Virus record (IMG/VR): IMGVR_UViG_3300032236_002285
Coordinates: 310,001-374,000 of that record
Strand: one strand, 5' to 3'
Length of the DNA: 64,000 bases
Shown: one piece after another, positions 2,064 to 64,000 of the stretch
How positions within the stretch are numbered: the stretch's first letter is position 1
How the letters are laid out: the number at the start of each line of letters is the position of its first letter
Program-made: the position numbers and the translations under genes
Notes under the pieces: model-generated
Told to the model about the DNA's origin: nothing
Database searches by the model: none
What the model saw: the letters and a program-made list of their open reading frames with translations, nothing else

Positions 2064-2302
2064 GAGACTTGTTTAAGATAAAAGATGAATATGCTTATCA
2101 AAGTTGGTATAGTGATGGTGTATTTGAATTAGATTATATACATAGTGATAGACATATGCCTAGTTTTGGCACTGATTGTTCTTGGACTAACTTTAAAACC
2201 AAAGAAACTATTAATATTTGGGATAGATGTATGAGAAAAATAACTGATGAAGAAGGTAAACAACTTATCAGAGAATATAATTTATCTCAATTAGGAATTT
2301 AA
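2060..2302 (+). CDS. Hypothetical protein with C-terminal tag (REYNLSQLGI)
   Basis: ORF track; ATGA overlap with the upstream gene. Confidence 0.7.
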   Translation: MRDLFKIKDEYAYQSWYSDGVFELDYIHSDRHMPSFGTDCSWTNFKTKETINIWDRCMRKITDEEGKQLIREYNLSQLGI

Positions 2303-3057
2303 TAAGCGGATTTTGTATCAGTTGATAAGTTATTTAGCTTATCAACTGCTGCATAACCCATACCAAATCTATTTACCATAGGTAACATAGAGTTAATTTG
2401 ATCAGATGTTCTAACACCACCAGAGGCTTTAATATTCATTTGCTTACCAGAATCTTTGATTGTGTCAAACATAATTTGAATCTTATTCATTTCAGCACCA
2501 ACAGCTACTTTACCGGTAGATGTTTTAATAAAATCAGCACCGGCTTCTAAACAAATATCAGTTGCTATTTTAGTTTCTTCTTCTGAAAGTAATCCAGATT
2601 CAACAATAACTTTAAGTATAACTTTTTCACCTTCTTTATTAGTATTAGAGTGACAAATATTAACCAATGAAGAAACTTCTTCAACTAAGAAATCATAATT
2701 TTCTTTCTTATTCTCAATTAACATTTTATAATTAAGAACCATATCAACCTCATCAGCACCATCAGAAATAACCTGTCTAGTTTGATCTTCTTTTTGAGTT
2801 AGTGATAAATTACCTTCTGGGAAAGAAACAACCGTACAAACTAAAACCTTTGAATGTATTAATTGTTCTTTAGCTAAGGCAACGTGTTTAGGAAGAACAC
2901 AAACTGATTTTACACCTAGCATATCAGCTTTTTTACAAAGGTTGATAATATCTGCGTCAGTTGCTGAGTCTTCTAATAAAGTATAATCAATCATGTTGTT
3001 ATACTGGAACATATTGTTCTCTTTAATAAATTGTGTGTAGTTCTTAATCTTTTTCAT
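2299..3057 (-). CDS. deoC: Deoxyribose-phosphate aldolase with N-terminal CTS-like tag
   Basis: IDYTLL, GADEVDMV, LKVIVESG, GADFIKTSTGK, IKASGGVR. Likely start MKKIKNYTQFIKE at 3057. Confidence 0.93.
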   Translation of the reverse strand: MKKIKNYTQFIKENNMFQYNNMIDYTLLEDSATDADIINLCKKADMLGVKSVCVLPKHVALAKEQLIHSKVLVCTVVSFPEGNLSLTQKEDQTRQVISDGADEVDMVLNYKMLIENKKENYDFLVEEVSSLVNICHSNTNKEGEKVILKVIVESGLLSEEETKIATDICLEAGADFIKTSTGKVAVGAEMNKIQIMFDTIKDSGKQMNIKASGGVRTSDQINSMLPMVNRFGMGYAAVDKLNNLSTDTKSAY

Positions 3058-3058
3058 A

Positions 3059-4036
3059 TTACTTTTCAAAATTTACCATTGTTTTTACAAACAACTTCAT
3101 ATCTTCAGTTGTTCTCATAATTTTAGAAACGTGAGGAAGATTCCAAGGTGAGTGACCAGAGATTTTCCACCCATCAATATACCAAGCAAACATTGGTTTA
3201 TTCAAGAATGATGTTTGTTGTAATTCGCCAAATGTACCACCACTTGTTACTTCATTGAATCCTACAAATACAGCATCACACTTGTTCACAATCAATTCAT
3301 CTTCAGGTTCAATTGTACCAGAGAAGATTCTTGATATCTCATCAAATTGTCTTGGGTCTTTAGTATCTTCATATTCACCAGATTTGAACTTACCCATTTC
3401 TTTACCAAAGTTAGGATTCTTAGTTCTATCCATTTCTTTTCTAACCGGATTAAGAACAGCTGGTCTATCATAATATTTAAGTGTGTAATTGTTACCTTCT
3501 TCAACAAATTGAGCTAAGTGTTCACCATCTACTACATAAGCAGGTTGTACTACAACATTCTGACCGTGATAAGGAATGTTAATCTTTTCCATTTCTTCAT
3601 AAGGTGAACCAGGGTTATTTACTTCAAATTCATATTCTACTTGAGCTCTCCATCCTGCGCCAACATCTTTAGCTTTATCCATACCACCGGCAAGGTATAT
3701 AGAATTTAATTCAAATGCTCTAAAGTTTTTCTTGATATCATCTAAAGTTGTTAAGTCAAAAAGGTCTAACTTACCAATCAATTCGGTATAAAATCTTTTT
3801 TTCTTGTTAACAATGTAGTTCATTATCTTTTCATCAAACCATTTAATAAGACGGTCTTTTAAGTTACTAAAGAAACCTTCATTTAGTGATTCAGTTAAAA
3901 GTGGTTGTAAATCTTTTTTAAGAGCTGGTATATCTTTTGATGAAATATTTTGAGCAATGTAATTTAGAATTGCTTCTAAATCTTTTTGTTCTTGATTATC
4001 ATACGACTCATTGAATTGTTGCCAGTTTTGGATCAT
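3059..4036 (-). CDS. Nucleoside 2-deoxyribosyltransferase-like protein with N-terminal CTS-like tag
   Basis: SIYLAGGM, KCDAVFV and TSGGTFGE motifs of the NDT/Rcl family; begins MIQNWQQFNES. Confidence 0.6.
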   Translation of the reverse strand: MIQNWQQFNESYDNQEQKDLEAILNYIAQNISSKDIPALKKDLQPLLTESLNEGFFSNLKDRLIKWFDEKIMNYIVNKKKRFYTELIGKLDLFDLTTLDDIKKNFRAFELNSIYLAGGMDKAKDVGAGWRAQVEYEFEVNNPGSPYEEMEKINIPYHGQNVVVQPAYVVDGEHLAQFVEEGNNYTLKYYDRPAVLNPVRKEMDRTKNPNFGKEMGKFKSGEYEDTKDPRQFDEISRIFSGTIEPEDELIVNKCDAVFVGFNEVTSGGTFGELQQTSFLNKPMFAWYIDGWKISGHSPWNLPHVSKIMRTTEDMKLFVKTMVNFEK

Positions 4037-4057: not shown

Positions 4058-4066
4058 TATATATTA
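4058..4066 (-). promoter_or_regulatory. Putative phage late promoter TAATATATA
   Basis: Exact 9-mer about 22 nt upstream of ATG 4036; recurs at about 17 intergenic sites. Confidence 0.6.
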
Positions 4067-5759: not shown

Positions 5760-5788
5760 AAAAAACCACTTTCAAGTGGTTTTTTTTT
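5760..5788. terminator. Bidirectional intrinsic terminator
   Basis: AAAAACCACT-TTCA-AGTGGTTTTTTTT between convergent genes. Confidence 0.8.
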
Positions 5789-6236
5789 ATTGTATATTTT
5801 TAAGTTTTGCTATTTGTCTTTCAAGACTTTGAATTTTTGCCTCGTATTCGGCTTTACTAATCTTCTTAGCATCATAGAAGCCGGTAGAGAATAATTCTAA
5901 ATTATTTTTAATTGTAGCTGCTTTGATTCTAGCATGTAATTTAGAAACAGCTTTAACATTTATAATTGTTCCTATATTTCTACCATAATCATCTGTGTTA
6001 TATACTTCATAAATATCCCATTCATCAGTCATTGTTGGGTTTAATACTGATAGATGATTAACTTCCGCTATTCTTTTATCATAGTATTCTGTATTTTTTG
6101 AAGATACGACTTTAGTACACCAATCTTTGAATTTTTCACCAAGCTTTTCTAAAAATTCGTTTACATCAGATTCAACATCAATTGGATCTTTGTAAGTATC
6201 TGATTCAAATATTTTATAATTATTTAAATGTTTCAT
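5787..6236 (-). CDS. Hypothetical protein with CTS-like N-terminus (MKHLNNYKIFES)
   Basis: ORF track; downstream of the neck gene. Confidence 0.75.
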   Translation of the reverse strand: MKHLNNYKIFESDTYKDPIDVESDVNEFLEKLGEKFKDWCTKVVSSKNTEYYDKRIAEVNHLSVLNPTMTDEWDIYEVYNTDDYGRNIGTIINVKAVSKLHARIKAATIKNNLELFSTGFYDAKKISKAEYEAKIQSLERQIAKLKNIQ

Positions 6237-7050: not shown

Positions 7051-7081
7051 AAAAATTATATTTCTTTTGTTTATATATTAA

Positions 7082-7306: not shown

Positions 7307-7474
7307 CCTTTTAATTTTTTTCTTTCTTTTCTCATTGTTTAAAGCATCTTTTCCAGAGACTCTTAACTCTTTCCAATTGCTACCATCAAATACATAAGTT
7401 TTACTTTTATTAATATCATAGTAAACTTCACCGGTTGATGGACTATGAGATTCCCAAGTATTTTGAGCTATCAT
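7295..7474 (-). CDS. Small hypothetical protein (59 aa) with C-terminal tag variant (KRKKKIKRLFK)
   Basis: Not in ORF track. My translation is MIAQNTWESHSPSTGEVYYD...FDGSNWKEL...; the ATG overlaps the dnaJ stop. Confidence 0.65.
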   Translation of the reverse strand: MIAQNTWESHSPSTGEVYYDINKSKTYVFDGSNWKELRVSGKDALNNEKRKKKIKRLFK

Positions 7475-14509: not shown

Positions 14510-14535
14510 AAAAGACCCAATTGGGTCTTTTTTTA
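14508..14535. terminator. Bidirectional intrinsic terminator
   Basis: AAAAAGACCC-AATT-GGGTCTTTTTT. Confidence 0.85.
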
Positions 14536-15699
14536 TTTTACTTTCTTGAATACAACTAAAATTTGTTTTAATTTTATTTCAGTTACTTTATTTCTTTCTT
14601 TCATATCATCCGCTCTTTCAGGATATCTTTCTAAGTCAACATTAAGTGACCAAGATTTAGTACAATTATCTAAATCAGATAAAAGAGTTTCTATATCAGA
14701 ACCAGTTAAAACCAACTTATCATTGGAAGCATAATTCATACTTAACTTTTCAACATTAAGAGTTTTATAATATCTATTCCAAAGAGGTTTATCAGTATCA
14801 TCATCATATCTGTTTGAGTATTCTTTAGCTGCTGGAATTATTTCAGTTCCAAATCTACCGGCACTACCATTATAGAATAAAGGTCCTTCAACTCTATAAT
14901 TTATTACATAATTAAAATTAAGTTTTTCACTTTTCAAATAATCTTTAATTCTTTCTGAGACATCAGTTAGTAAGGAATTGACATCACTTGAATATAAAAG
15001 ATTTCTACTTTCACCAACTCTTATATCTAAACTAAGATAATTTTGCTCTTTACTGAAATAAGGTTTCACATCAACTGGTAATTCATCTTCCATTTCTAAA
15101 CAGATATCATCTACATATTGTTCAACCTCTTTTACTTTTTCTAATTCATCATATCTTGCTGCGATTAGAATCATTGGAAAGTTAGCAGGATCTTTTAGTT
15201 TATCTGGATACAACTTACCTTTAGAGTTCTTAGACATAATAAAATCATCTTCTGGATAAATATCAGAATCACTCAATCTATAACCTTTATAAGTATCACC
15301 TTTAGATATTTCATCTTTAGAAATAAAAATAACATCTCTGCCAATTTTACCGTGTTCTCCACCACCAGTTGATTTATAATCTTTAGCTAAGTAAAGATTC
15401 CAATCTCTTAAAAACATTGCCCATTTTAAAGAGTTAGGTGGTAATTTATCTATAGTTACTTTTTCTAATTCATGTTTCATTATTTGTGTATCACCTGTGT
15501 AGAATGGTGAATCTTTAAGACCTTTAGTAGCTCTTTTTAATTCACTCCATTTAATATTCAACATTGGATAGATACCAAGAAGTTTTTTACCAAGAAATCC
15601 TAAAAGAGCATTTGGTATAAACATAAGAGATCTTTTCTCAGAAGGACTTAGTTCTTCGTTTACTTTATTGAAATTGTTATATGATTGTAAGTGTTTCAT
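14533..15699 (-). CDS. Hypothetical protein with CTS-like N-terminus (MKHLQSYNNFNKVNEE)
   Basis: ORF track; late operon. Confidence 0.75.
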   Translation of the reverse strand: MKHLQSYNNFNKVNEELSPSEKRSLMFIPNALLGFLGKKLLGIYPMLNIKWSELKRATKGLKDSPFYTGDTQIMKHELEKVTIDKLPPNSLKWAMFLRDWNLYLAKDYKSTGGGEHGKIGRDVIFISKDEISKGDTYKGYRLSDSDIYPEDDFIMSKNSKGKLYPDKLKDPANFPMILIAARYDELEKVKEVEQYVDDICLEMEDELPVDVKPYFSKEQNYLSLDIRVGESRNLLYSSDVNSLLTDVSERIKDYLKSEKLNFNYVINYRVEGPLFYNGSAGRFGTEIIPAAKEYSNRYDDDTDKPLWNRYYKTLNVEKLSMNYASNDKLVLTGSDIETLLSDLDNCTKSWSLNVDLERYPERADDMKERNKVTEIKLKQILVVFKKVK

Positions 15700-15703: not shown

Positions 15704-16168
15704 TTAATCTATTTTTCTGAATGCAAATGTAACAGAGTCAACCATTTGATTATCTGGTAAAGCATCTACTGAATTATAATATAAATACTTAGGAATTCTC
15801 ATAGTAAAAATATATTCTATTTCAAGACCTAATTCACCCTTAGCATATGATTCAGCAAATTTTAAATCTTCTTTAATATCAGATAAATTAAACTCTTTTA
15901 ATGTAGGTCCAAAAAATCTTGTATTGTCTTGAGCCAAAACTCTTTTTTCAATCTTAACATCTACTGTTTTTATAGATTGAGAAGTGCCTGGTTCTTCTTG
16001 CATATAATGAATATCAATTACATTTGATTTAGAAAAATCTAATTTTAGTGTATTTGATTCTTTAACACTAACTTTAAATCCTTGGTCTTTTAGTTCTTGA
16101 AATATATCCAAGAATATACTAAAATCCTGAGATTCAAATATTTTATATGATTTCAGGTGTTTCATCAA
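15704..16168 (-). CDS. Hypothetical protein with CTS-like N-terminus (MKHLKSYKIFES)
   Basis: ORF track; late operon. Confidence 0.75.
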   Translation of the reverse strand: MMKHLKSYKIFESQDFSIFLDIFQELKDQGFKVSVKESNTLKLDFSKSNVIDIHYMQEEPGTSQSIKTVDVKIEKRVLAQDNTRFFGPTLKEFNLSDIKEDLKFAESYAKGELGLEIEYIFTMRIPKYLYYNSVDALPDNQMVDSVTFAFRKID

Positions 16169-16748: not shown

Positions 16749-16881
16749 ATTGTATATATTAAATAAATTTTGTATTTTTGTAGTATTATAAAATAAATTA
16801 GTTTTATAATCGTCTATTTACAAGATAGTATAAAAAATTCAATTATACAAATTATTATTGACTTATTTTAATATATAAATT

Positions 16882-18225
16882 ATGAAGCTATTTAGATATA
16901 AAGAATTTTTAAGAGAATCATTGGAGTCAAAAAACTACAATATTCCCACATATGAACAAGCACTTGAACTTTGCTCAGGTGAAGAATCCCCATTTTATGA
17001 ATCTAAGATGGTTGTTGATGGGTTTAATGTATCTGTATTTAACTACCGTCTTGCTCAATATAAAGACTTTGCTAATCCTATTCCAGAAAAACCAGAGTTG
17101 AAAGGCTACGAAATGAGAGGTTTGACTTTTGTTTTTAATGAAGATGGTTCTTTATTCAATAGATATGTACTACTTGAAAAGTTCTTTAACTTAAATCAAG
17201 TACCAGAATCTTTATATTCAGTTGTTAAGAACTATAAAATTAAATTTGTGAATAACAAAGAAGATGGTTCTATTGCTTCATTTATTAAACTACCAAACGG
17301 TAAAATCGTTGGTAAATCTAAAATGGGGTTTGATAATGACCAAGCTGAAGGTATTAATCGTATTTATAAAACTAATAATCAAATCAAAAGTCTTGTTAAA
17401 TGGGCTTTAGATAATGATATTGTGCCTATATTTGAATATGTAGCACCAAACAACCGTATTGTATTAAGATACCCAGGTGAAGAATTAATCTTATTGAGAT
17501 TAAGAGATAATAAAACAGGTAAACATATTGATATTAGAGATCACTTAGATAAGGTTGGTGATATTAGAATTGCGCCATTTGAAGATGAAGTAAAAGACTT
17601 GGATCAATTAATTGAGTTGACAGCTACTCAAGTAGATAAAGAAGGTTCAATTGTTACTTGCGAAGATGAAATGGGTAGAGACTTTTTCTTTAAGTTAAAG
17701 ACTCCTTGGTATTGTGAACGTCATGGTTTACTTACTGAAGATCTTTATAGAGAGCATGTTATTATTGGTTATATCTTAGATGATAAGATAGACGATATCT
17801 TAGGTCAAGTACCAGAAGATGAAAAAGAAGCACATGAAAGAATTAATAAGATTATTTCTATTGTTAAGAAAACCATATCTGACAAAGTGTCAGAAATTGA
17901 AAAAGCTTACGAACAATTTGTCAAGTCTGGTATGACTAAAAAAGAATATGCTCTAAAGCATAGAGTTGGTAACCCAAACTTTGCCTTTGTGATGAATATG
18001 GTTAAGGCTGATGATTTAAGGAAGATGTCTAAGGAAGAAATCCTTGACATTTATGATATTATGGAAGACTATGAAAAATCATTACAAAGATGTGAACCAT
18101 ATGAAATGGCTAAAGAATGGTTAAGAGATATGACTAAGAGATTACACATTGCTAGAGAATGGTTACAAACAAAAGATAAAACTTTGTTTTTCCAAGATCC
18201 AGAAGAAAATGATGATGATAACTAA
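16882..18225 (+). CDS. T4 Rnl1-like RNA ligase with CTS-like N-terminus
   Basis: RGLTF, LEKFFNLNQ, KEDGS (motif I), FEYVAPNNRIV, EG, KLKT; starts MKLFRYKEFLRES; TAATATATA at 16869-16877. Confidence 0.85.
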   Translation: MKLFRYKEFLRESLESKNYNIPTYEQALELCSGEESPFYESKMVVDGFNVSVFNYRLAQYKDFANPIPEKPELKGYEMRGLTFVFNEDGSLFNRYVLLEKFFNLNQVPESLYSVVKNYKIKFVNNKEDGSIASFIKLPNGKIVGKSKMGFDNDQAEGINRIYKTNNQIKSLVKWALDNDIVPIFEYVAPNNRIVLRYPGEELILLRLRDNKTGKHIDIRDHLDKVGDIRIAPFEDEVKDLDQLIELTATQVDKEGSIVTCEDEMGRDFFFKLKTPWYCERHGLLTEDLYREHVIIGYILDDKIDDILGQVPEDEKEAHERINKIISIVKKTISDKVSEIEKAYEQFVKSGMTKKEYALKHRVGNPNFAFVMNMVKADDLRKMSKEEILDIYDIMEDYEKSLQRCEPYEMAKEWLRDMTKRLHIAREWLQTKDKTLFFQDPEENDDDN

Positions 18226-20773: not shown

Positions 20774-22006
20774 TTAATTTTCTTCATATCCACCATCGGT
20801 ATCTTTTAGATATCTATCATATCCTATACTAGGATCATTACTAATTCTATAATTATCTAAATTAAGATAACACATTGTATCACAATAAGGATAATATTCA
20901 AAATCAGCAGAATCTAAATCAACTTTTATAGTAGCTTCTTTTATAGTTGAACCATCTGTAATTGATTCTTCTGGTTCCATTGATTGTCTTTTTTTATACC
21001 ACCAACCATTCTTTTCAGCAAATTGCTTGAATAGTTCAACATCAGCATCTTGTGATGTATAAATTCTATCCATGAATTTAATCGGTTGACCATCAGCCTT
21101 AGCATCCCAAAGGATTGCTCTACCTTTAATCAAAAAATCTGTATATTTACCGTCAGTAATTGTACCACCATCACCATAAAGAATAACTAATGACACTTGA
21201 CTATTTTGTGTATAAATATCAAAATAATCAGAATCAACTGAGGCCATACAAGAGTTATTTAGTGAACCACCACCATCAACATATTTTTCTGAATCATACC
21301 AATAAGCAATTTTACTACCTTTAACTATATCAAATTGTTTAAGTGCATCTTTTGCAAAGTCATAAGTTGCTTTATAAGTATTAGTAAATTGTTCTAATTC
21401 GGTATCTGTTATTGGTATTTTAGCCGCTGTTAAAATAGCTCTTGCTACTCTACCGATTTTAATATTATTTCTTGATGTTGACCAAATTCTTTGATCCTCA
21501 GCATCAGTTGGTTCCATAGCTTCCTTATTAATAACACCTATTTTCTCACCATTATATTCTTTGAACATAACAAATATTTTACCAGATGTTCTACTAACCG
21601 TTTCCGATAGAATAACGCCTATTTCACCAACAGAAGGTGACCAGCAATTATATTTTTTCTTATCATAACCAAGTGCACTGAATATACTATCATTTCTATC
21701 ACTACTTGTAAGGTATCTACCACCATCAATTATTTTCCAGGTTTCTGGTCTATCTTTAATAATATCTTGAACTTTTCTATCAGGAGTAAAGCTAACAGCA
21801 TCTTTAGCATCAGTAATATCAATATAGTTTTGAGCAATACCATCAACATCTTTTGAATAAAGACTTAGTAATTGACTTGCTATTTTATTAGCTTTCATTT
21901 TACTTAGCAAGTTTATAAACTTTTTAGAGTAAATAACCTTGGACTCAAGTAAAATATCATAAATTGCTTTTTCTGAAATAAAATCTCCGTATTTAAGAAC
22001 ACTCAT
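20774..22006 (-). CDS. Hypothetical phage protein with CTS-like N-terminus (MSVLKYGDFISE)
   Basis: LNNSCM, GRAILW, FMDRIY and YPYCDT motifs; TAATATATA at 22029-22037. Confidence 0.75.
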   Translation of the reverse strand: MSVLKYGDFISEKAIYDILLESKVIYSKKFINLLSKMKANKIASQLLSLYSKDVDGIAQNYIDITDAKDAVSFTPDRKVQDIIKDRPETWKIIDGGRYLTSSDRNDSIFSALGYDKKKYNCWSPSVGEIGVILSETVSRTSGKIFVMFKEYNGEKIGVINKEAMEPTDAEDQRIWSTSRNNIKIGRVARAILTAAKIPITDTELEQFTNTYKATYDFAKDALKQFDIVKGSKIAYWYDSEKYVDGGGSLNNSCMASVDSDYFDIYTQNSQVSLVILYGDGGTITDGKYTDFLIKGRAILWDAKADGQPIKFMDRIYTSQDADVELFKQFAEKNGWWYKKRQSMEPEESITDGSTIKEATIKVDLDSADFEYYPYCDTMCYLNLDNYRISNDPSIGYDRYLKDTDGGYEEN

Positions 22007-24100: not shown

Positions 24101-24664
24101 TTATTCAGTTTCGATTTCAAATTCCTCTTCTTCACCAAATTTATCATCCATTTCAATTTTTAAATCAACTAGAAACTCTTCATCAATCTTTTTAATTTCA
24201 ACATTCTTTGTTATCTGACCAATAACTTCAAATGTATCAAGGTCGTATTTTTTGAATTTAATGTAACACTTCTCAATATCTTCATATGAGAAGTCTTTAT
24301 TAGGATCTTTTGGTAAAGCTTCTTTAATATCAATAGCTATGAAAAGATTATAAGTAGCCTCATCATCAGAAAATTTAACGGTTAGATTATCATACATTTT
24401 TGAGTATTTAGATATCTCAGAACTTTCAAGTCTAACGCCTAAATCTTTTAACGACATCTTAGATTTATCCTTAGCTTCAGCCTTAGCTCTTTTAATAGAT
24501 TTTTCAGTTTTACCTTCTTCTGATGGTTCTTCTGACTCATTTTCTTGAAATTCAAACATCTTATCAATCTTTCTTTTGATTTGCTTTAAAGCAAGCTCAA
24601 CATAAGACTCCGGAGTGTCATTCATTTCTTCGTTAATAAAATCCGCATATTTTCTAATTTTCAT
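24101..24664 (-). CDS. Acidic hypothetical protein with CTS-like N-terminus (MKIRKYADFINEE)
   Basis: ORF track; TAATATATA at 24669-24677. Confidence 0.75.
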   Translation of the reverse strand: MKIRKYADFINEEMNDTPESYVELALKQIKRKIDKMFEFQENESEEPSEEGKTEKSIKRAKAEAKDKSKMSLKDLGVRLESSEISKYSKMYDNLTVKFSDDEATYNLFIAIDIKEALPKDPNKDFSYEDIEKCYIKFKKYDLDTFEVIGQITKNVEIKKIDEEFLVDLKIEMDDKFGEEEEFEIETE

Positions 24665-36788: not shown

Positions 36789-37509
36789 AACATTATTTAT
36801 ATCAGATATTCACTTGGGTAACCATAAGTCACAAGCTGATAAATTACTTGAAGTGTTAAAAAGTTATGATTATGAAAATTTAATTATAGTTGGTGATTTC
36901 ATTGACTTAACATCACTAAAGAAAAAATTCTATTGGAATTCTGACCACTCTACCGTTATTCAAAAGGTTTTAAGATCTTCAAGAAAAGGTGTTAAAGTTA
37001 CTTACATCTTAGGTAATCATGACTTTTATTTAAGAGGTCTTATAAAAGATGAAAATATAAATATTGGTGATATTGAGCTTTGTGATGAAATGTACTATCA
37101 AACATTAAAAGGTGAAAAAATATACATTTGTCACGGTGATCAGTTTGATGGTTTTGTTAGATTACATCCTTTCTTATATGTTTTAGGTGATTGGGCTTAT
37201 GAATTTAGCTTTAAGATTAATAAAGCTTATAACTGGTTTAGAAGAATATTTGGACTTGAATATTGGTCTTTATCACAATATCTAAAATCCAAGGTTAAAA
37301 ATGCACTAACTTATATAAATGATTTTAAGCTATTATCTCTTAAAAAATTAGATGAGGTTAAATGTGATTCAATTATGATTGGTCATATTCATACACCAGC
37401 AATTGAAAAAGTAGGTAATAAAAATTATTACAACACTGGAGATTTTTGTGAAACCTGTTCGTTTTTATATGAAGACTTAGAAGGTAGTATCAATCTTATG
37501 ATTGCTTGA
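36778..37509 (+). CDS. LpxH-like UDP-2,3-diacylglucosamine diphosphatase (calcineurin-like metallophosphoesterase)
   Basis: ISDIHLG, GDFID, GNHD, HGD.FD, GHIH.P, NTGDF. Confidence 0.8.
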   Translation: MKIRTLFISDIHLGNHKSQADKLLEVLKSYDYENLIIVGDFIDLTSLKKKFYWNSDHSTVIQKVLRSSRKGVKVTYILGNHDFYLRGLIKDENINIGDIELCDEMYYQTLKGEKIYICHGDQFDGFVRLHPFLYVLGDWAYEFSFKINKAYNWFRRIFGLEYWSLSQYLKSKVKNALTYINDFKLLSLKKLDEVKCDSIMIGHIHTPAIEKVGNKNYYNTGDFCETCSFLYEDLEGSINLMIA

Positions 37510-37983
37510 TTTTCTAGCATTGTTGTGATGCCAGAATGATGGGACTTTTACATAATAACCCTTGGGTAAGGTGGAATTGGACCATGGTCCGCATCCTCCT
37601 GGTTCATTTACTATAAACCCAAAATACCATTTATATAAGCGGTCATTATAATCTATATTGGCTTTATCACCATCGGTTGAATAAAAGCTATTATTATTAA
37701 CTTTAAACATTTGCATATCTAAGAAAGGATTATTATACTCTTGTGATAAAAACCTTGAAACTCTTCTAATAGCTTCAATAACATTTGAGTCTCTCTTAAA
37801 TTCTCTATTAGAATAAATTAAAATCTCATAAAAACAAATACCATCTTTATTATCATAAATAACATCAGTTTTTAACCCCAAGTCATTTATCTCAACAAGG
37901 ATATCCTCAATATCTCTTTTTATACTTTGCGGGTCAGCACTTTCAACAATTAAAAACTCGTTGTATTTCTTTAACCTTTGCAT
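37477..37983 (-). CDS. Hypothetical protein with CTS-like N-terminus (MQRLKKYNEFLIVES)
   Basis: ORF track; ATG 37983 preferred. Confidence 0.7.
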   Translation of the reverse strand: MQRLKKYNEFLIVESADPQSIKRDIEDILVEINDLGLKTDVIYDNKDGICFYEILIYSNREFKRDSNVIEAIRRVSRFLSQEYNNPFLDMQMFKVNNNSFYSTDGDKANIDYNDRLYKWYFGFIVNEPGGCGPWSNSTLPKGYYVKVPSFWHHNNARKSSNHKIDTTF

Positions 37984-42107: not shown

Positions 42108-42141
42108 TATGAAAGTATATATTAAATTTTATATATAGGAT

Positions 42142-42711
42142 ATGAGATATTTAAAATATTTTGAATCTAAAGAAAATCCAGAAGAGTTAATGTTGAAGTA
42201 TGCTGATGATATCGTCAGAGTTTATGTTACTTATGATAGGGAGTTTAGTGGTGATGATTTAAGTTATAGATTATCAGAAGTAGTTTGGAACACCTCTGTA
42301 GGTGATGAATATGGTGAAACAGGTGTTTTAACTGAAGATATGATGCGTCAAGTGATTGAAGATCACAAAGGTGCTTGGAGAGCTATTGACAAACTACTTG
42401 AAGTTTATTATGATTGTAAACCATTTGTTGACTCATTAAACAAAGATTTAGAAAAAGACATTCAAGAAATATTTTTAGATTACTCTGATATCGGTCAGGT
42501 TGAAGTTTCTAAAACTTCTAAGTTTAACGATGATAGATATGCTGTTAATATAAAAATGAAAGATATATTCTTTCAAATTAATTTTGAAGAAGTATTTGGT
42601 AGAATAAAAGAATTAGGATTTGAAAGTTATCACGTCGATGGTGTTAAAAACGGTTCTACTGAATATATGAAAATTGAATTTTGGAAACCACTACCAAAAG
42701 AAGAAGAATAA
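42142..42711 (+). CDS. Hypothetical protein with CTS-like N-terminus (MRYLKYFES)
   Basis: ORF track; TTATATATA upstream. Confidence 0.75.
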   Translation: MRYLKYFESKENPEELMLKYADDIVRVYVTYDREFSGDDLSYRLSEVVWNTSVGDEYGETGVLTEDMMRQVIEDHKGAWRAIDKLLEVYYDCKPFVDSLNKDLEKDIQEIFLDYSDIGQVEVSKTSKFNDDRYAVNIKMKDIFFQINFEEVFGRIKELGFESYHVDGVKNGSTEYMKIEFWKPLPKEEE

Positions 42712-49783: not shown

Positions 49784-50073
49784 AAGTTTATTGTAAAAGA
49801 ACCTATTTTGAGAAAAACACATATTTCTTTCCAGTAAATGGAAAAGAATATGGTCAAGATTATGTTAAGTGGGCTTGGGGTAAACTATATGAATGTAGAG
49901 AACCTGATGGTTATGAAAGAGGTGGTCATACAGAAATGTTTCCAGGAATTTATTTGTACATAGAATCTGAAGTTAAAAATACTTGGTACCCGATAAAAGA
50001 AAAGGAATTTAAAAGACACTTTGAAACTTTAGAAGAAAATCGTGATAGAAAATTAGAGCAAATTTTAAAATGA
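49780..50073 (+). CDS. Hypothetical protein with tag (RDRKLEQILK)
   Basis: ORF track. Confidence 0.7.
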   Translation: MKVYCKRTYFEKNTYFFPVNGKEYGQDYVKWAWGKLYECREPDGYERGGHTEMFPGIYLYIESEVKNTWYPIKEKEFKRHFETLEENRDRKLEQILK

Positions 50074-57649: not shown

Positions 57650-57997
57650 TTATTTTTTAATATTACCATATCTTTCTAATGGCTCACCAAAATTAATATC
57701 TGTTATACGACTTGGAAAATTCATATTTTTAATCTTTTCAAGTTCATAACCCAGTGACATCTTTGACATCTTTGAAATATCCATACCATTGAATTTAATA
57801 TTATCTAGAAATTGCTCAGCCATCTGTTCTCTAATATCAGCTTTGTGTATTCTACTGGCAACCTCTTCTATATTATTTAGGTCTGTTGTAGATACACAAT
57901 CAGTTACTTCTATTTTACCACTCTCTGGGTTATATACATGTTTCTTGTAAGTTACTGTTTTACTTGAACTCTCATTAAACTTATTTAAGTGCTTCAT
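57650..57997 (-). CDS. Hypothetical protein with CTS-like N-terminus (MKHLNKFNES)
   Basis: ORF track. Confidence 0.7.
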   Translation of the reverse strand: MKHLNKFNESSSKTVTYKKHVYNPESGKIEVTDCVSTTDLNNIEEVASRIHKADIREQMAEQFLDNIKFNGMDISKMSKMSLGYELEKIKNMNFPSRITDINFGEPLERYGNIKK

Positions 57998-58006: not shown

Positions 58007-59056
58007 TTAATTTTTATTTATAATTGATTCGTTTTGATAGTTGTGATTTAAAGTAATTCTTAAAAAAGTTCTTCTTTTACCTTTACTGATTAACAATGTT
58101 TCGTGAGGTGTATTACTTGACATAAAGTATAATTGATTCTTTTCAAAAATAACTTTTCTATCGTCAGTTAATTGTTCTTCCATTTTTTCAAATGAACCTT
58201 CTGACATAATTTCACCGTGAAAATCACCTGTCCAAGCTTGACATCCAACTTCAGTTGATACTGTTAAAATACCACCTTTTGAAGATGAAACATATTCAGA
58301 AACAGGGATAGTAATATCATAAGGTAAAACCCAGTCCATTTTGACGTGAGAGTTATCTGGTTGTGCTTCAAATTGTGACTCTCTAACTAAAGAGTAAACA
58401 TCATTATCACCTTTTACTAAAGAGTATTTAGGATAAGAAACTGATTCGTAAGAAGCACCACCCCAACTTGGTCTTGGTTCAGCACCACCCCAAGATGATT
58501 TGATATCTTCAACATTTTCTGAATCATAAGTAGCTCCACCCCAAGATGGCCTTGGTTCAGCACCACCCCAAGAAGATTTTGATGGTTCTTGATAAGAAGC
58601 ACCACCCCAAGATGAAGAATTATCATCATAACTAGCACCACCCCAAGAAGCTTTCTCTGTAATAGCTGATGAGAAATAAGGATCAACACAGAAGTTACCA
58701 TCAATATGAACACCTTCTCTTCTCAAGAACTCATCAGTTGTAAAGAATTTAGTATCTATTGTAACATAGTGAGTGTTAGCACCTTCTTGTAAAGGAATAT
58801 ATTTTAGAACTTCATTGAAAGATTCTTCCCATTGTTTGAACCCTTCTGGTAAAGAAACCCAAGAACCATTGTTTTCAAATGGCATAACACTTAATTTGAA
58901 ATCACCGGTATTTGGGTCTGGTAGAATAACCTCACCTAAGTTTTTAACACTTGTTCTGTGATAGTTAACATTCTCAATAAGCATTTTTTTAGATTTACTT
59001 TCAGGTTTTGATAGTAAACTTTCTTTGAATTTTAATAAGTTTTTTAGATACTTCAT
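58007..59056 (-). CDS. 2OG-Fe(II) dioxygenase-like protein with internal SWGGA repeats and CTS-like N-terminus
   Basis: GVHID (HxD), PHE, RRTFLRI; six SWGGA units; starts MKYLKNLLKFKES. Confidence 0.6.
   Translation of the reverse strand: MKYLKNLLKFKESLLSKPESKSKKMLIENVNYHRTSVKNLGEVILPDPNTGDFKLSVMPFENNGSWVSLPEGFKQWEESFNEVLKYIPLQEGANTHYVTIDTKFFTTDEFLRREGVHIDGNFCVDPYFSSAITEKASWGGASYDDNSSSWGGASYQEPSKSSWGGAEPRPSWGGATYDSENVEDIKSSWGGAEPRPSWGGASYESVSYPKYSLVKGDNDVYSLVRESQFEAQPDNSHVKMDWVLPYDITIPVSEYVSSSKGGILTVSTEVGCQAWTGDFHGEIMSEGSFEKMEEQLTDDRKVIFEKNQLYFMSSNTPHETLLISKGKRRTFLRITLNHNYQNESIINKN
58445..58655 (-). repeat. Six SWGGA-coding repeats, including a duplicated KSSWGGAEPRPSWGGA unit
   Basis: Repeated (A/G)CACCACCCCAA on the plus strand. 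Confidence 0.85.
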
Positions 59057-59059: not shown

Positions 59060-59314
59060 TTACATTTCTATTTTTTCAACGTCATTTAAATCGACATTGT
59101 ATTCTTTTCCGTTAATCTCAACGGTGATTAAACCATCTTGATCAATATCAACTGGAGTCATACCTTCTTCAGGTTTATTTTCAGGAAAATCATGAACAAT
59201 TGTAGCATAAATAAGACCTCTATTTTTTATACAGTTTATAATATCCTCTTGTGTTATAAGAGTTCCTTCTTCATTGTTCTTCTTAAAATCCTCAAAAAGT
59301 TTCATCCATTTCAT
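59060..59314 (-). CDS. Hypothetical protein with CTS-like N-terminus (MKWMKLFEDF)
   Basis: ATG 59314 follows TAATATATA at 59320-59328. Confidence 0.7.
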   Translation of the reverse strand: MKWMKLFEDFKKNNEEGTLITQEDIINCIKNRGLIYATIVHDFPENKPEEGMTPVDIDQDGLITVEINGKEYNVDLNDVEKIEM

Positions 59315-59319: not shown

Positions 59320-59341
59320 TATATATTAAATTTAATATATA
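59320..59341. promoter_or_regulatory. Back-to-back divergent TAATATATA late promoters
   Basis: Minus-strand copy at 59320-59328 and plus-strand copy at 59333-59341. Confidence 0.65.
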
Positions 59342-62300: not shown

Positions 62301-63286
62301 ATATATTTGCTAGTAATTATGTATTACAAATTGGATTATATGATAGTTCTAATAACTTATTAAGTCCGGTATTTGAAAGTTTACCACCAACATCAACCAG
62401 TAACAATGTATCTGAACAGATGCTTGATTTTATATATGCTCCTGTAAGTAATACTGATGTTAAAATTAGAACAACTGGTAATACTACAGCTTTGAGTGGT
62501 GAAAATGTTAGAGGTGATGTTGCTACTTTCTTCTCTATTGTTGAAGTTGGTAATAACTCAGGTACAAGTGGTTTACTTTCATTAACTGGTGCGACAAATA
62601 ATGGTTTAATTACATTAAATGGTTCAGCTCCTAATGGTACAGTTGAATCTAATCTAACATTTGATGGTACAACTTTAACAGTTACAGGTACGGTGAGTAC
62701 TACAAATAACGCTACTTTTGGTGGTCAAATAACAATTGGTAAAACAACTGCTGCACTTAATGAAGGAGGTCAGATTGATTTAGCAACTGCACCAAGTGGT
62801 GGTTTAACTGGTAGTACTGTTACTTTAGATATTTATGCTGATAAATTTAGAATATTTGAAGCTGGTGGTAATAATAGAGGTGTTAGTATTGACCTTAGTA
62901 AGGCTCCTAATACTGTTGGTGGTGAATTGATGTGGAAAACTGGTGGTTATGTGAATGCGGGTTCGTATGTAACTTTAGATAACTTAAAAGCAACAGTAAC
63001 AACATCGGGTAATCGTGGGTTAAGTTTGGCTACTGTAGCAGGAACAGTTAGTAGTACAATAAGTGGTTCATATGCACTCTATGCTGGTGGTATCAGTGGT
63101 ACATCTAATGCTTTAACAATAACAACAACAGCAAGTAGTTCATTATTTAGTTGGAACTTTACTGGTCAAGGTGACACAGCAACATATATTATTAATGATA
63201 CGACAAATAGTAGAGTATATCGTATAATATTAATGATAGGTGGTAGTTATAATAATAACTTGATTACAATTGAAAGATTAGTTTAA
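59363..63286 (+). CDS. Tail-fibre/virion-surface-like protein with Gly-Ser-Thr repeat linkers and beta-sandwich domains
   Basis: N-terminal CBM5/12-like motif (W...Y.TGDVV.Y...W); several GSSGTS blocks between C1q/BclA-like domains; late promoter upstream. Confidence 0.7.
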   Translation: MALQWQGGWVGSGAPGTSLVTYYTGDVVLYENISYVVQKNVISVPIGSPPPPNDMSNWDVLVAGGTSGSSGTSGVGGGSGTSGSDGSSGSSGTSGSSGINGVSGSAGSSGTSGVNGSSGSAGSSGTSGYGIPTGGTSGQVLAKIDGTNYNTQWINQTGGVGSGTSGTSGVNGGGYLKMTQLLDNVQATSRSGSTIVTEWTTSYTSVAGSTLMFNLSFTAYVPSSGATKQFDLLVDSSVVASTTFFFNQTNVHTTIPCLFNVESLSAGTHTIQIRIPAGVVVDTGDYAKMTVIETMSDGVTGTSGSSGTSGTTLNFAASYMRGSRSTQQATGLTAGSRVVFTQTDNSTGSDISLNTSTGQITLSSGKTYRILGQVPNITSTGGNLALCWYNETAGAYIGSLSSIYSPTNGAGYAAFGGLSEVLLTTSTSTIISYRITNNNSVTGLGGNTDFTTTGSYPWFDIEVISGYSPLVNGTSGSAGTSGSSGSSGTSGSSGVNGSSGQTGSNGSSGTSGSSGSSGSSGSSGSSGSSGSSGTSGTSPTGVAVSVVYPSLLLASNSADQSGVGNGTAVAFQTTNASNGSLITKTSNTQVTLTGGKTYKLEAIIRRFVSNSTWGTFKWYDVTNSAYVGIEGFGEVTTSSQPVASTAIATYIVTPPINTTYELRQTTANSITVSGGYASYEIIQLDPTIMVNNGTSGSSGTSGSSGSSGSSGTSGSSGVTGNSSLLIRKHSATQSIPTSSDTVVLFDTLKSSSGSQTLTYSNGTFSNTSSTTRTYIVEATISFALNSTGTRAVYIGLNSASTALPENRYAETLIQTATSDGTGINVCGSIQLAPSEYFKIYTWQSSGGNLTIGNSVGFNGCQVTIQETAGSGTSGSSGTSGSSGSSGSSGLNGTSGSSGTSGSSGTSGSSGSSGTSYNGTSNYLYATRTVTQTIASGTWSNRDIIFNTKNTGSGITYATASGIASLTGGRVYKINAGVSWNIFASNYVLQIGLYDSSNNLLSPVFESLPPTSTSNNVSEQMLDFIYAPVSNTDVKIRTTGNTTALSGENVRGDVATFFSIVEVGNNSGTSGLLSLTGATNNGLITLNGSAPNGTVESNLTFDGTTLTVTGTVSTTNNATFGGQITIGKTTAALNEGGQIDLATAPSGGLTGSTVTLDIYADKFRIFEAGGNNRGVSIDLSKAPNTVGGELMWKTGGYVNAGSYVTLDNLKATVTTSGNRGLSLATVAGTVSSTISGSYALYAGGISGTSNALTITTTASSSLFSWNFTGQGDTATYIINDTTNSRVYRIILMIGGSYNNNLITIERLV

Positions 63287-63323
63287 CATTTTTAATATAT
63301 AAGAAAGAAATAATATTTACAAT

Positions 63324-64000
63324 ATGAAATACTTAAAAAGATTTAACGAAGAACTTAAACCAAGTACATATATGTCTGCTGCTAAAAAGCTAACAGCAAT
63401 TGGTCATACAGGTAGAGCCAATGCTCTAAAAGATTGGGCGAATGAAACTGAAAAAAGAGAAGAGATGTCTAAGTGGAAGGATCGTTTACAAGACTATGGT
63501 CTTTTTGGTTCTTATAAGATGAATATTGTTAATCCAGAAACTGAAGAAAAATTTACAGGTGATTTTTACTTAGATATTAATTTTGATGAAATGGCATTTG
63601 AGGATAGCTTTGAATATGAGAAAGAAAATAATCCAGATAATATTAAAGGTGTTTCTATTTTATTTTTTATTGGTTTAATTCCAACATCTGAAGAAACACT
63701 TAGAAAATGTATGGAGATTATGCCTTGTGCAGAGTTTGGTAATGGTATGTTCTGGGGTATGAGTTGTGGTTTAGACTTACAAATTCTAAACGATAGATTA
63801 ACATTTACTAAATTCAGTTTAGATGATTATGATGATAACCTATCAGGTAATGTTTCTTTTGCTGATAGAGCTTCTGCTGGTAAATTCAAAACTTTATTAA
63901 AGAATATATTTAGTAATCCAGAATTAAACTATCCAAGTGGATATACAGATGTTGAATATATGTACCAAAAATTAGAACAAGTAGTTTGTATTAGACAATC
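63324..64000 (+). CDS. Hypothetical protein with CTS-like N-terminus (MKYLKRFNEE), runs off the window
   Basis: Not in ORF track. Open from ATG 63324 to the window end; TAATATATA at 63293-63301. Confidence 0.75.
   Translation, partial: MKYLKRFNEELKPSTYMSAAKKLTAIGHTGRANALKDWANETEKREEMSKWKDRLQDYGLFGSYKMNIVNPETEEKFTGDFYLDINFDEMAFEDSFEYEKENNPDNIKGVSILFFIGLIPTSEETLRKCMEIMPCAEFGNGMFWGMSCGLDLQILNDRLTFTKFSLDDYDDNLSGNVSFADRASAGKFKTLLKNIFSNPELNYPSGYTDVEYMYQKLEQVVCIRQ

What the first reader, a model, noticed from the sequence alone, without database searches (positions are those of the whole stretch)
2299..64000. Late proteins carry a T4 capsid-targeting-sequence-like N-terminal tag (MKxLxx[YF]xxFxE[SE])
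Seen in sequence: MKKIKNYTQFIKE (deoC), MIQNWQQFNES (3059), MKHLNNYKIFES (5787), MKHLQSYNNFNKVNEE (14533), MKHLKSYKIFES (15704), MKLFRYKEFLRES (Rnl1-like), MSVLKYGDFISE (20774), MKIRKYADFINEE (24101), MQRLKKYNEFLIVES (37477), MRYLKYFES (42142), MKHLNKFNES (57650), MKYLKNLLKFKES (58007), MKWMKLFEDF (59060) and MKYLKRFNEE (63324). The short ORFs at 18225 and 18467 carry weaker versions. Each gene is directly behind, or in an operon behind, a TAATATATA or TTATATATA site. Known: T4 internal proteins are packaged through a 10-residue N-terminal CTS (MKTYQEFIAE type) that the prohead protease gp21 removes after Glu. Inference: at least 14 proteins in this window alone are capsid cargo injected with the DNA. 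They form a second address class that is mutually exclusive with the C-terminal tag.
Basis: partly seen in the sequence, partly recalled or inferred. Interest (0 to 1): 0.75.

Follow-up and report, generated by a model that had tools for sequence, protein, structure and literature searches.

The report
Capsid-loading tag on huge-phage proteins
About one in eight proteins of this 476-kb phage starts with the same 10-15-residue label, which closely resembles the signal phage T4 uses to load proteins into its head, so these giant phages may inject a large ready-made protein toolkit with their DNA; packaging itself is not yet shown.

Summary
The window lies in a 476-kb phage of the Mahaphage group. 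A profile built from the tags finds 82 of 620 genes at 10 bits or more, against 4 of 1859 internal Met sites. Synonymous codon use shows selection on the peptide, not the RNA. With the tag removed, the 82 proteins fall into 77 unrelated families, including DeoC, Rnl1, a CCA-adding enzyme, an Acb1-like phosphoesterase and NUDIX.

The same profile picks ipIII, ipII and ipI, and nothing else, in 100 kb of T4. The tag carries the aromatic pair and the hydrophobic-x-Glu that were mapped in T4 as targeting and processing residues. The phage has a T4-type portal, capsid protein and prohead protease fused to a repeat scaffold; matching Glu sites occur in the capsid propeptide and the scaffold. T[AT]ATATATA behaves as the late promoter, and 75 of 82 tagged genes lie in late units.

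Related huge phages have the tag on 5-19% of genes; Lak and the cultured PTm1 do not. Packaging and cleavage remain inferred. Best reading: a greatly expanded T4-type capsid-targeting system (confidence about 0.6).

The parts
2299..3057 (-). DeoC-like aldolase with tag MKKIKNYTQFIKE|N (tag codons 3016-3057)
   Evidence: Pfam DeoC starts at residue 27. HMM 20.5 bits. 90 of the 120 best homologues carry a tag, followed by a linker of variable length. In the AF2 model the tag lies outside the barrel at low pLDDT.
3059..4036 (-). 325-aa protein of unknown function, tag MIQNWQQFNE|S
   Evidence: 15.3 bits; late promoter 21 nt upstream.
5787..6236 (-). 149-aa protein of unknown function, tag MKHLNNYKIFE|S
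   Evidence: 24.2 bits; second gene of the unit headed by the promoter at 7072-7080.
14533..15699 (-). 388-aa protein of unknown function, tag MKHLQSYNNFNKVNE|E
   Evidence: 21.3 bits; in the unit headed by the promoter at 16753-16761.
15704..16165 (-). 153-aa protein of unknown function, tag MKHLKSYKIFE|S (consensus form)
   Evidence: 26.1 bits.
16882..18225 (+). Rnl1-type RNA ligase with tag MKLFRYKEFLRE|S
   Evidence: Pfam RNA_lig_T4_1. Residue 24 aligns with residue 5 of T4 RnlA, so the tag is a 19-residue add-on. Promoter 4 nt upstream.
20774..22006 (-). 410-aa protein, weak variant MSVLKYGDFISE|K
   Evidence: Only 4.9 bits, but it matches Y..F[I].E as in the T4 CTS. It is a paralogue of tagged genes g197 and g314. 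Promoter 22 nt upstream.
24101..24664 (-). 187-aa protein, tag MKIRKYADFINE|E
   Evidence: 16.3 bits; promoter 4 nt upstream.
37477..37983 (-). 168-aa protein, tag MQRLKKYNEFLIVE|S
   Evidence: 21.6 bits; promoter 26 nt upstream.
42142..42711 (+). 189-aa protein, short tag MRYLKYFE|S
   Evidence: 15.3 bits; promoter 4 nt upstream.
57650..57997 (-). 115-aa protein, tag MKHLNKFNE|S
   Evidence: 18.1 bits; third gene of the unit headed by the promoter at 59320-59328.
58007..59056 (-). 349-aa protein, tag MKYLKNLLKFKE|S
   Evidence: 11.1 bits; matches phrog_8970, function unknown.
59060..59314 (-). 84-aa protein, weak variant MKWMKLFE|DF
   Evidence: 8.3 bits; promoter 5 nt upstream.
63324..64000 (+). 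254-aa protein (runs past the window end), tag MKYLKRFNE|E; one of a paralogue group whose other member sits just upstream of the portal gene
   Evidence: 19.9 bits. Paralogues g450 and g447. g54, next to the portal, has the same N-terminal 25 residues.
16869..16877 (+). Late-promoter-like site T[AT]ATATATA. Further sites heading tagged units: + strand 42129-42137 and 63293-63301; - strand 4058-4066, 7072-7080, 16753-16761, 22029-22037, 24669-24677, 38010-38018, 59320-59328.
   Evidence: Site coordinates. Genome-wide there are 192 sites, 151 of them within 60 nt upstream of a start. The site stands before structural and lysis genes and not before replication genes.

Best explanation
The tag is a capsid-targeting propeptide of the T4 internal-protein type, used here on a very large scale.

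Proposed mechanism:
1. Tagged proteins are made late, together with the head proteins.
2. The basic, amphipathic N-terminal part (M-K-x-[LI]-K-x-[YF]-x-x-F) docks them onto the assembling prohead core. The probable receptor is the acidic 13-residue repeats (Y-S-E-Y-[IL]-A-E-N-L-D-K-N-I, about 14 copies) of the scaffold, which is fused to the prohead protease.
3. Once the shell closes, the Glu-specific prohead protease cuts after the invariant Glu (hydrophobic-x-E | S/E/N).
4. The 10-15-residue tag is lost and the mature protein stays in the head with the DNA.
5. It enters the next host cell with the DNA.

Shown here: the tag's existence, its N-terminal position, its portability, protein-level selection, its likeness to the T4 IP CTS, late-promoter linkage, the T4-type head module, and matching Glu sites in the capsid protein and scaffold.

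Inferred: docking on the scaffold repeats, cleavage, packaging and injection.
For: 1. Specific and N-terminal. 82 of 620 genes against 4 of 1859 internal Met sites; almost no internal profile hits in whole proteins.

2. Protein-level selection. Synonymous codon shares inside the tag equal the genome's, for example AAA 0.78 vs 0.77 and Ser AGT 0.21 vs 0.22.

3. Portable.
- There are 77 BLAST families among the 82 tag-less bodies.
- The tag precedes the known domain starts of DeoC, Rnl1, CCA/polyA-polymerase head, an AAA_33 kinase, GluRS, NUDIX and an Acb1-like 2H phosphoesterase.
- Rnl1 has 19 extra residues compared with T4 RnlA.
- DeoC orthologues carry interchangeable tag variants plus a linker of variable length.
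- The tag lies outside the DeoC barrel at low pLDDT.

4. Likeness to the T4 CTS.
- The profile scores MKTYQEFIAE at 12.8 bits.
- In 100 kb of T4 only ipIII (11.6), ipII (10.9) and ipI (9.8) exceed 8 bits.
- T4 mutagenesis mapped targeting to residues 4 and 7 (Tyr, Phe) and processing to residues 8 and 10 (Ile, Glu) (PMC9026906). These are the Y..F[IL].E of the tags.

5. T4-type head. Portal PF07230 at 4.7e-59 and capsid protein PF07068 at 4.5e-27. The protease gives only a weak Peptidase_S77 match, but His73, Ser128/129 and His86 are invariant, and it is fused to a scaffold.

6. Glu sites of the same type elsewhere in the head.
- Capsid propeptide ..SINE|NAYVNAS, conserved in relatives.
- Invariant LNE|S at the end of the protease domain.
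- The scaffold has 7 NE[SN] where 0.33 are expected (p = 2e-7, the most enriched protein in the proteome) and 21 [LIVFM].E[SN] where 2.3 are expected.

7. Glu, not Asp. The first acidic residue at positions 7-16 is Glu in 72 of 81 tags here and 91 of 96 in LR756502, although the proteome's E:D ratio is about 1. In T4, Asp at that position blocks processing.

8. Late timing.
- T[AT]ATATATA precedes the sheath, head-completion, portal, protease, capsid, neck and amidase genes.
- It precedes none of the polymerase, clamp-loader, RNR, gyrase, SSB, ligase or helicase genes.
- 75 of 82 tagged genes lie in such units against 198 of 538 untagged genes (p = 5e-22).

9. The tag state is stable. Of 184 reciprocal-best orthologue pairs with LR756502, 17 are tagged in both and 159 in neither; the other 8 are borderline scores.

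10. Clade-specific, and co-occurs with the repeat scaffold.
- Tagged genes: LR756502 97/507, LR756504 5/112, LR756501 11/101, LR756500 9/97.
- All four have the Y..Y[IV]AE repeats.
- PTm1, with a different scaffold repeat, has 1/310.
- Lak-A1 has 0/91; no protease-scaffold homologue was found in its sampled 100 kb, so it says nothing about the scaffold.

11. Shared 7-residue motif. Y..[FY][LIV].E occurs 11 times in the scaffold (0.17 expected), in 14 of 82 tags and in 2 of 521 untagged N-termini.

12. Precedent. T-even phages carry many unrelated Ip proteins that share only the N-terminal leader and act as injected anti-defence proteins (PMC12373910).
Against: - No virion proteome exists for this clade, so packaging, cleavage and injection are untested.
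- 80-100 or more different cargo proteins (13-19% of genes) is far beyond any phage studied. For DeoC and GluRS there is no obvious reason to be in a capsid.
- The complex prediction of tag, protease domain and scaffold repeats gave no answer.
- The tag profile does not hit the scaffold repeats, so the docking idea rests on a 7-residue pattern and on charge complementarity.
- Some tags (such as MKHLKTYESF..) do not place a hydrophobic residue at P3.
- The protease's Pfam match is below the curated cut-off.
- The late promoter also drives 198 untagged genes.
- My gene calls are heuristic. Some database DeoC homologues are annotated without the tag, starting at the internal Met of the core; these are probably short gene calls.
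Confidence: 0.6

Rival explanations
1. The tag is a docking peptide for some other late-phase assembly or hub, not the capsid interior. Examples would be a phage-made compartment, an enzyme cluster, or a tail or neck accessory structure. All tagged proteins would bind one abundant receptor other than the prohead core.
For: The tag is portable and conserved. Metabolic and translation enzymes carry it: DeoC, GluRS and a CCA-adding enzyme. A second, C-terminal address class exists, which hints at more elaborate sorting. The complex prediction did not support scaffold or protease binding (this is no evidence either way).
Against: This does not explain the specific likeness to the T4 IP CTS. It does not explain the Glu-not-Asp rule with a hydrophobic P3 and Ser at P1', which mirrors sites in the capsid protein and scaffold. 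It does not explain co-occurrence with the repeat scaffold. No candidate receptor was found.
Confidence: 0.17
2. The tag recruits a chaperone or acts as a short regulatory propeptide. It could be a binding site for the phage's own Hsp70 system (DnaK, DnaJ and GrpE-like genes lie in the window), or a timer cut by a protease in the cytoplasm.
For: The tag is a hydrophobic/aromatic core flanked by Lys or Arg: mean 2.3 basic residues in the first 8 against 1.2 in untagged proteins. That loosely resembles Hsp70 client motifs (my own knowledge). Hsp70-, J-domain- and GrpE-like ORFs are read in the window (by eye only).
Against: The invariant Glu next to the core is atypical for Hsp70 sites. The only Glu-type protease identified is fused to the scaffold, so it should act inside proheads. 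This reading does not explain the match to T4 internal proteins.
Confidence: 0.08
3. The shared N-terminus is a by-product of gene birth. A promoter-plus-first-codons cassette would be copied by recombination in front of new genes, or all tagged genes would descend from one family, with no address function.
For: Half of the tagged genes have the late promoter 4-30 nt upstream. Tagged genes form arrays, as in LR756502 at 10-90 kb. T-even ip loci are recombination hot spots.
Against: 34 tagged genes are internal to operons, with no promoter beside them. The bodies are unrelated, and known enzymes have the tag as an add-on. Orthologues 56-77% identical keep the pattern while tag class and linker vary, which indicates purifying selection on the pattern itself. 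The tag state is stable between genomes.
Confidence: 0.06
4. The conservation is in the mRNA: a 5' coding-region signal for translating leaderless or short-leader late transcripts.
For: Many late promoters end 4-8 nt before the ATG, which implies leaderless or nearly leaderless mRNAs.
Against: Synonymous codon use in the tag equals the genome's, including both Ser codon families and both Leu families. 47 untagged genes have the same 2-9 nt spacing. Only 25 of the 82 tagged genes have that short spacing. PTm1 has a similar Bacteroidetes host and is AT-rich (not measured here) yet lacks the tag.
Confidence: 0.03

Closest known systems
[quoted passage not shown]
   Same: - N-terminal, 10-15 residues.
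- Aromatic pair three residues apart, followed by hydrophobic-x-Glu.
- Found on unrelated, non-core, fast-evolving proteins.
- Late expression.
- A phage with gp20-type portal, gp23-type capsid protein and gp21-type protease.
- The profile built here recognises the three T4 IPs and nothing else in 100 kb of T4.
   Different: - Usually 1-3 extra basic residues at the start (MKH-LKxY..).
- Three interchangeable length classes.
- P1' is mostly Ser.
- 80-100 or more carriers per genome, against 3 in T4 and about 10 across the T-evens.
- Carriers include sizeable enzymes.
- The protease is fused to a repeat scaffold.
- Bacteroidetes-type hosts.
- Packaging has not been demonstrated.
Propeptides of head and ejection proteins of giant phages phiKZ, 201phi2-1 and SPN3US (PMC5694885, PMC10052503)
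   Same: Giant phages load dozens of proteins into the head. A gp21-like protease cuts after Glu at a short motif. The propeptides are thought to direct incorporation.
   Different: Those propeptides are mostly 80-130 residues long and are not a shared short consensus. The cleavage motif there is A/S/G-x-E. The SPN3US gp53/54 N-terminus scores 0.2 bits with the profile here. Only 8-19 proteins are processed there.
Encapsulin cargo-loading peptides
   Same: A short portable peptide addresses diverse enzymes to the interior of an HK97-fold shell.
   Different: Those peptides are usually C-terminal, are not removed by a protease, bind the shell rather than a scaffold, and show no sequence likeness. 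This comparison rests on my own knowledge and was not tested here.

Membership tests
T4 IP-type capsid targeting sequence | Located at the extreme N-terminus, 10-19 residues | tested here: met
   82 gene starts against 4 of 1859 internal Met sites. 72 of the 82 tags have their first Glu (searching from position 6) at positions 8-12.
T4 IP-type capsid targeting sequence | Sequence likeness to MKTYQEFIAE, with aromatic residues at the positions mapped for targeting (4 and 7) | tested here: met
   The profile scores the T4 CTS at 12.8 bits, aligning Y and F. ipIII, ipII and ipI are the only T4 hits above 8 bits. The mapping of residues comes from PMC9026906.
T4 IP-type capsid targeting sequence | Processing determinants: a hydrophobic residue two positions before a Glu (Asp not tolerated) | tested here: met
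   Glu in 163 of 177 tags, against a proteome E:D ratio of about 1. P3 is F, Y, L, I or V in 63 of 81 tags. This holds at sequence level only.
T4 IP-type capsid targeting sequence | Portable: attached to unrelated proteins | tested here: met
   77 families among 82 bodies. The tag is an add-on relative to T4 RnlA and to the DeoC core.
T4 IP-type capsid targeting sequence | The phage has a T4-type prohead: gp20 portal, gp23 capsid protein, gp21-type protease, scaffold core | tested here: met
   PF07230 and PF07068 are strong. PF03420 is weak (20-23 bits, cut-off 27), but His, Ser and His are invariant and the domain is fused to a scaffold.
T4 IP-type capsid targeting sequence | Carriers are made late, together with the head proteins | tested here: met
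   By promoter inference only: 75 of 82 lie in units headed by the site that precedes the structural genes. No transcript data.
T4 IP-type capsid targeting sequence | The tag directs the protein into the prohead | not testable with these tools
   The complex prediction gave no answer. Virion proteomics or a reporter assay is needed.
T4 IP-type capsid targeting sequence | The tag is removed by the prohead protease after the Glu | not testable with these tools
   Only analogous sites in the capsid protein, the protease C-end and the scaffold.
phiKZ/SPN3US-type long head-protein propeptides | Propeptides of about 80-130 residues cut at A/S/G-x-E | tested here: not met
   The tags are 9-16 residues, with a hydrophobic or Asn-containing motif before the Glu. 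The SPN3US N-terminus does not match the profile.

The most novel reading that the evidence does not exclude
Phages of the Mahaphage clade would load roughly 80-150 different proteins into the head by one short N-terminal address. Each tag would dock on one of about 14 tandem 13-residue repeats of a protease-scaffold fusion and be clipped off after Glu. The phage would then arrive in the cell with a pre-made first-strike proteome: a tRNA repair set (Rnl1, a kinase, a CCA-adding enzyme), an Acb1-like anti-CBASS phosphoesterase, NUDIX, ankyrin proteins and dozens of unknowns. A separate C-terminal tag would mark a set of small non-late proteins for a different fate.
Probability: 0.4. Interest if true: 0.85.

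Novelty: new variant of a known kind. Interest (0 to 1): 0.7.

Why it matters
If the tag does what its T4 counterpart does, three things follow.

1. One sequence rule would predict the injected proteome of a whole clade of uncultured huge phages. These phages are common: 1531 homologues of the protease domain were found in the metagenome protein database.

2. It would give a reason for part of their gene load: a large, fast-evolving arsenal delivered before any phage gene is expressed. That arsenal would include enzymes that repair tRNA and destroy defence signals.

3. It would offer a natural, modular packaging tag for a second phage lineage. It would also point to a concrete receptor candidate, the scaffold repeats, for a targeting step whose partner in T4, as far as I know, has not been identified.

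The tag also corrects start-codon calls, because many database homologues are annotated without it.

Tried and rejected
1. Complex prediction of tag, protease domain and scaffold repeats. The result was 'no answer' and is not used as evidence.

2. PHROGs on ten tagged proteins: only families of unknown function.

3. Pfam on about 50 tagged proteins: most have no family.

4. Tag profile against whole proteins: no hit in the scaffold repeats. The repeat-tag likeness is therefore limited to the pattern Y..[FY][LIV].E.

5. RNA-level explanation: rejected by the codon test.

6. Paralogy: rejected by all-against-all BLAST of the tag-less bodies.

7. General AT-richness or a Bacteroidetes start-context effect: rejected by PTm1 (1/310), Lak-A1 (0/91) and T4 (only the IPs).

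8. Literature search for the tag in huge phages: no paper links huge phages with capsid targeting.

9. Only 350 of the 642 kb of LR756502, and 100-kb samples of the other relatives, were read. Gene calls are my own heuristic, not a standard gene finder.


Full report
CONTEXT. The window is bases 310001-374000 of a single 476,236-bp virus record with 30% G+C. Its capsid protein is 69% identical to those of the 634- and 642-kb uncultured phages LR745206 and LR756502, 52-54% to the 636- and 735-kb genomes, and 29% to the Lak phages and to the cultured Tenacibaculum phage PTm1. The 634-735-kb genomes are the Mahaphage clade of Al-Shayeb et al., predicted to infect Bacteroidetes (PMC7162821). I called 620 genes with a simple codon-bias caller.

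THE OBSERVATION.
- All 14 quoted N-termini are present.
- Genome-wide, a strict regular expression matches 44 of 616 gene starts against 13 of 2273 internal Met sites. At the first ATG alone it matches 41, against a mean of 2.8 (maximum 8) in shuffles.
- A 16-position profile built from 40 clear cases finds 82 genes at 10 bits or more, against 4 of 1859 internal Met peptides.
- In the window, 12 genes pass. 59060 (8.3 bits) and 20774 (4.9 bits) are weaker variants. 18467 lacks the Glu.
- The consensus is M-[KR]-x-[LI]-K-x-[YF]-x-x-F-(0-3 residues)-E-[SEN]. There are three length classes: MKHLKSYKIFES, MKYLKRFNES and MIKKYxDFIKES.

PEPTIDE OR NUCLEIC ACID. Synonymous codon shares inside the tag match the rest of the genome for Lys, Phe, Tyr, Glu, Ser (both codon families) and Leu. 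Selection therefore acts on the peptide. Many late promoters end only 4-8 nt before the ATG, but only 25 of the 82 tagged genes have that spacing, and 47 untagged genes have a similar 2-9 nt spacing. A leaderless-mRNA signal is not the explanation.

A PORTABLE LABEL.
- With the first 18 residues removed, the 82 proteins fall into 77 BLAST families.
- Pfam places the tag in front of known domains: DeoC (domain from residue 27), T4-type RNA ligase 1, a CCA/polyA-polymerase head domain (from 38), an AAA_33/zeta-type kinase, GluRS (weak tag; domain from 52), NUDIX, an Acb1-like 2H phosphoesterase (30.9 bits, cut-off 27), an OmpA-like domain and ankyrin repeats. Most others have no family.
- The ligase aligns with T4 RnlA from its residue 24 to RnlA residue 5, so it carries a 19-residue add-on.
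- Of the 120 best database homologues of the DeoC protein (56-100% identical), 90 score 10 bits or more. Most of the others begin exactly at an internal Met of the core and look like short gene calls.
- Across these orthologues the three tag classes replace one another, and the linker to the conserved core (IDYTLLE) varies from 6 to about 30 residues.
- An AlphaFold2 model gives the barrel pLDDT 96-99, but residues 1-10 only 56, with a short helix at residues 7-13.

LIKENESS TO THE T4 CTS.
- The T4 sequence MKTYQEFIAE is removed after packaging, and any protein fused to it is packaged (PMC8442874).
- Amber-suppressor work mapped targeting mainly to residues 4 and 7, and processing to residues 8 and 10. 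Asp at position 10 blocks processing (PMC9026906).
- The profile built only from this phage scores that 10-mer at 12.8 bits, aligning Tyr4 and Phe7 with the tag's aromatic pair.
- Among 142 genes in 100 kb of T4, only ipIII (11.6), ipII (10.9) and ipI (9.8) exceed 8 bits. Alt, gp24, gp67, gp68 and RnlA do not.
- The first acidic residue at tag positions 7-16 is Glu in 72 of 81 cases here and 91 of 96 in LR756502, although Glu and Asp are equally common in the proteome. P3 is F, Y, L, I or V in 63 of 81, and P1' is most often Ser.

THE HEAD MACHINERY.
- At genome 54-64 kb lie a T4-type portal (PF07230, 4.7e-59), a 720-aa protein, and a gp23-type capsid protein (PF07068, 4.5e-27).
- The first 170 residues of the 720-aa protein match the T4 prohead protease family weakly. 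His73, His86 and Ser128/129 are invariant across six phages.
- The rest of that protein is a scaffold with about 14 tandem 13-residue repeats, YSEY[IL]AENLDKNI. PTm1 annotates its counterpart as 'prohead core scaffolding protein and protease'.
- The capsid propeptide has ..SINE|NAYVNASNVAG. The site is conserved as QINE|N in LR756502 and TINE|N in PTm1, just before the block that corresponds by eye to T4's YNATNIAG.
- The protease domain ends in an invariant LNES.
- The scaffold holds 7 NE[SN] against 0.33 expected (p = 2e-7, the top protein in the proteome) and 21 [LIVFM].E[SN] against 2.3 expected.
- The tags therefore end in the kind of site that this head's own substrates display.
- The 7-residue pattern Y..[FY][LIV].E, which T4's YQEFIAE also fits, occurs 11 times in the scaffold (0.17 expected), in 14 of 82 tags and in 2 of 521 untagged N-termini.
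- This, together with opposite net charge, is the basis for proposing the repeats as the docking site. It is an inference: the profile itself does not hit the repeats, and the complex prediction gave no answer.

TIMING.
- T[AT]ATATATA occurs 192 times, 151 of them within 60 nt upstream of a start. There are two spacing classes, 4-8 nt and 17-30 nt.
- Using homology to annotated PTm1 genes, the site precedes the tail sheath, head completion, portal, protease-scaffold, capsid, two neck genes and the amidase.
- It precedes none of DNA polymerase, clamp loader, RNR, thymidylate synthase, helicase, ligase, SSB or gyrase.
- 75 of 82 tagged genes lie in units headed by this site, against 198 of 538 untagged genes (odds ratio 18, p = 5e-22).
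- None of the 35 genes shared with PTm1 is tagged. The tag marks accessory proteins, not shell, tail or replication proteins, as in T4.

DISTRIBUTION.
- LR756502 (first 350 kb): 97 of 507 genes, against 3 of 1593 internal Met sites, with long arrays of small tagged genes.
- 100-kb samples: LR756504 5/112, LR756501 11/101, LR756500 9/97, Lak-A1 0/91. PTm1 has 1/310.
- All tag-bearing genomes have the Y..Y[IV]AE..DK.I scaffold repeats. PTm1 has a different repeat. No protease-scaffold homologue was found in the Lak-A1 sample.
- Of 184 reciprocal-best pairs with LR756502, 17 are tagged in both, 159 in neither, and 8 are borderline.
- The exact class-A pattern occurs on 19 further IMG/VR contigs. 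In the DNA fetched around them, 46 of 174 genes are tagged.

INTERPRETATION. The best-supported reading is a T4-type capsid-targeting propeptide used on an unprecedented scale. T-even phages already show the principle: many unrelated Ip proteins share only the leader, are injected, and inhibit defence nucleases (PMC12373910). Giant phages such as SPN3US pack about 50 head proteins (PMC5694885). The identifiable carriers here fit a role at the very start of infection: a tRNA repair set, an Acb1-like enzyme, NUDIX and ankyrin proteins. DeoC and GluRS are harder to explain.

Packaging, cleavage and injection are not shown. The sheer number of carriers is the main reason for caution. No paper in the searchable library links huge phages with capsid targeting.

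THE C-TERMINAL CLASS. About 41 mostly small proteins end in ..R[DE]xK[LI]xx[LI]GI or ..ILK. Only one also has the N-terminal tag. With a slightly different pattern that picks 42 genes, none is directly behind a late promoter and 35 lie outside late units. The two labels therefore mark different temporal classes. The function of the C-terminal label is unknown.

Noticed in passing
genome-wide, e.g. window 1509-2063 (+), 2060-2302 (+), 27489-27992 (-), 32488-32916 (-), 47504-47863 (+), 49780-50073 (+), 50953-51396 (+); dense at genome 435-475 kb: A second, C-terminal label. About 41 mostly small proteins end ..R[DE]xK[LI]xx[LI]GI or ..ILK. They are almost never N-tagged (1 of 41). None of the 42 genes picked by a slightly different pattern sits directly behind the late promoter. 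Function unknown.
   Followed up: partly
window 16869-16877, 42129-42137, 24669-24677 (-), 16753-16761 (-), 59320-59328 (-) and others: The late-promoter-like site T[AT]ATATATA often ends only 4-8 nt before the ATG, which implies leaderless or nearly leaderless late mRNAs. A second class has 17-30 nt spacing.
   Followed up: partly
genome 59876-62038 (+), locus L005:2876-5038: Prohead protease fused to a scaffold with about 14 tandem 13-residue repeats (YSEY[IL]AENLDKNI) and an acidic His/Glu-rich stretch. The repeat is conserved in four related huge phages and replaced by another repeat in PTm1.
   Followed up: yes
window 16882-18225; genome 378728-379897, 395767-397008, 262867-264486, 305731-306276, 278693-279298: The tagged proteins with a recognisable domain include a possible tRNA repair and translation set (Rnl1-type ligase, CCA/polyA-polymerase head domain, AAA_33/zeta-type kinase, GluRS). 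They also include an Acb1-like 2H phosphoesterase and a NUDIX hydrolase, which look like counter-defence functions.
   Followed up: partly
window 7471-8523 (-), 9432-9869 (-), 18736-20619 (+): ORFs whose N-termini read like DnaJ (J-domain), GrpE and DnaK/Hsp70: a phage-encoded Hsp70 system. They are untagged and have no late promoter. Read by eye only; not run against a family library.
   Followed up: no
window 10982-13789 (+): A 935-aa protein with a typical N-terminal signal peptide (MKKIKLCLLSLLLILG..), so probably exported. Untagged.
   Followed up: no
genome 53888-54361 (next to the portal); window 63324-64000; genome 374440-375261, 376675-377454: A small group of tagged proteins shares MK[YH]L[KR][KR]F[NE]EEL..STY[MT][SK]AA.K. 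g445, g447 and g450 are linked by BLAST; g54, which sits directly upstream of the portal gene, is linked only by its N-terminus. Candidates for abundant internal head proteins.
   Followed up: partly
genome 63890-64576 (+), just after the capsid gene: A 228-aa protein with an NFACT-R RNA-binding domain (PF05670, 6e-17) inside the head gene cluster, behind a late promoter.
   Followed up: no
protein database hits P0161, P0179, P0183-P0198 and others: Many public gene calls for DeoC homologues from related phages start at the internal Met of the core and so omit the tag. Automatic annotation probably hides this tag in databases.
   Followed up: partly
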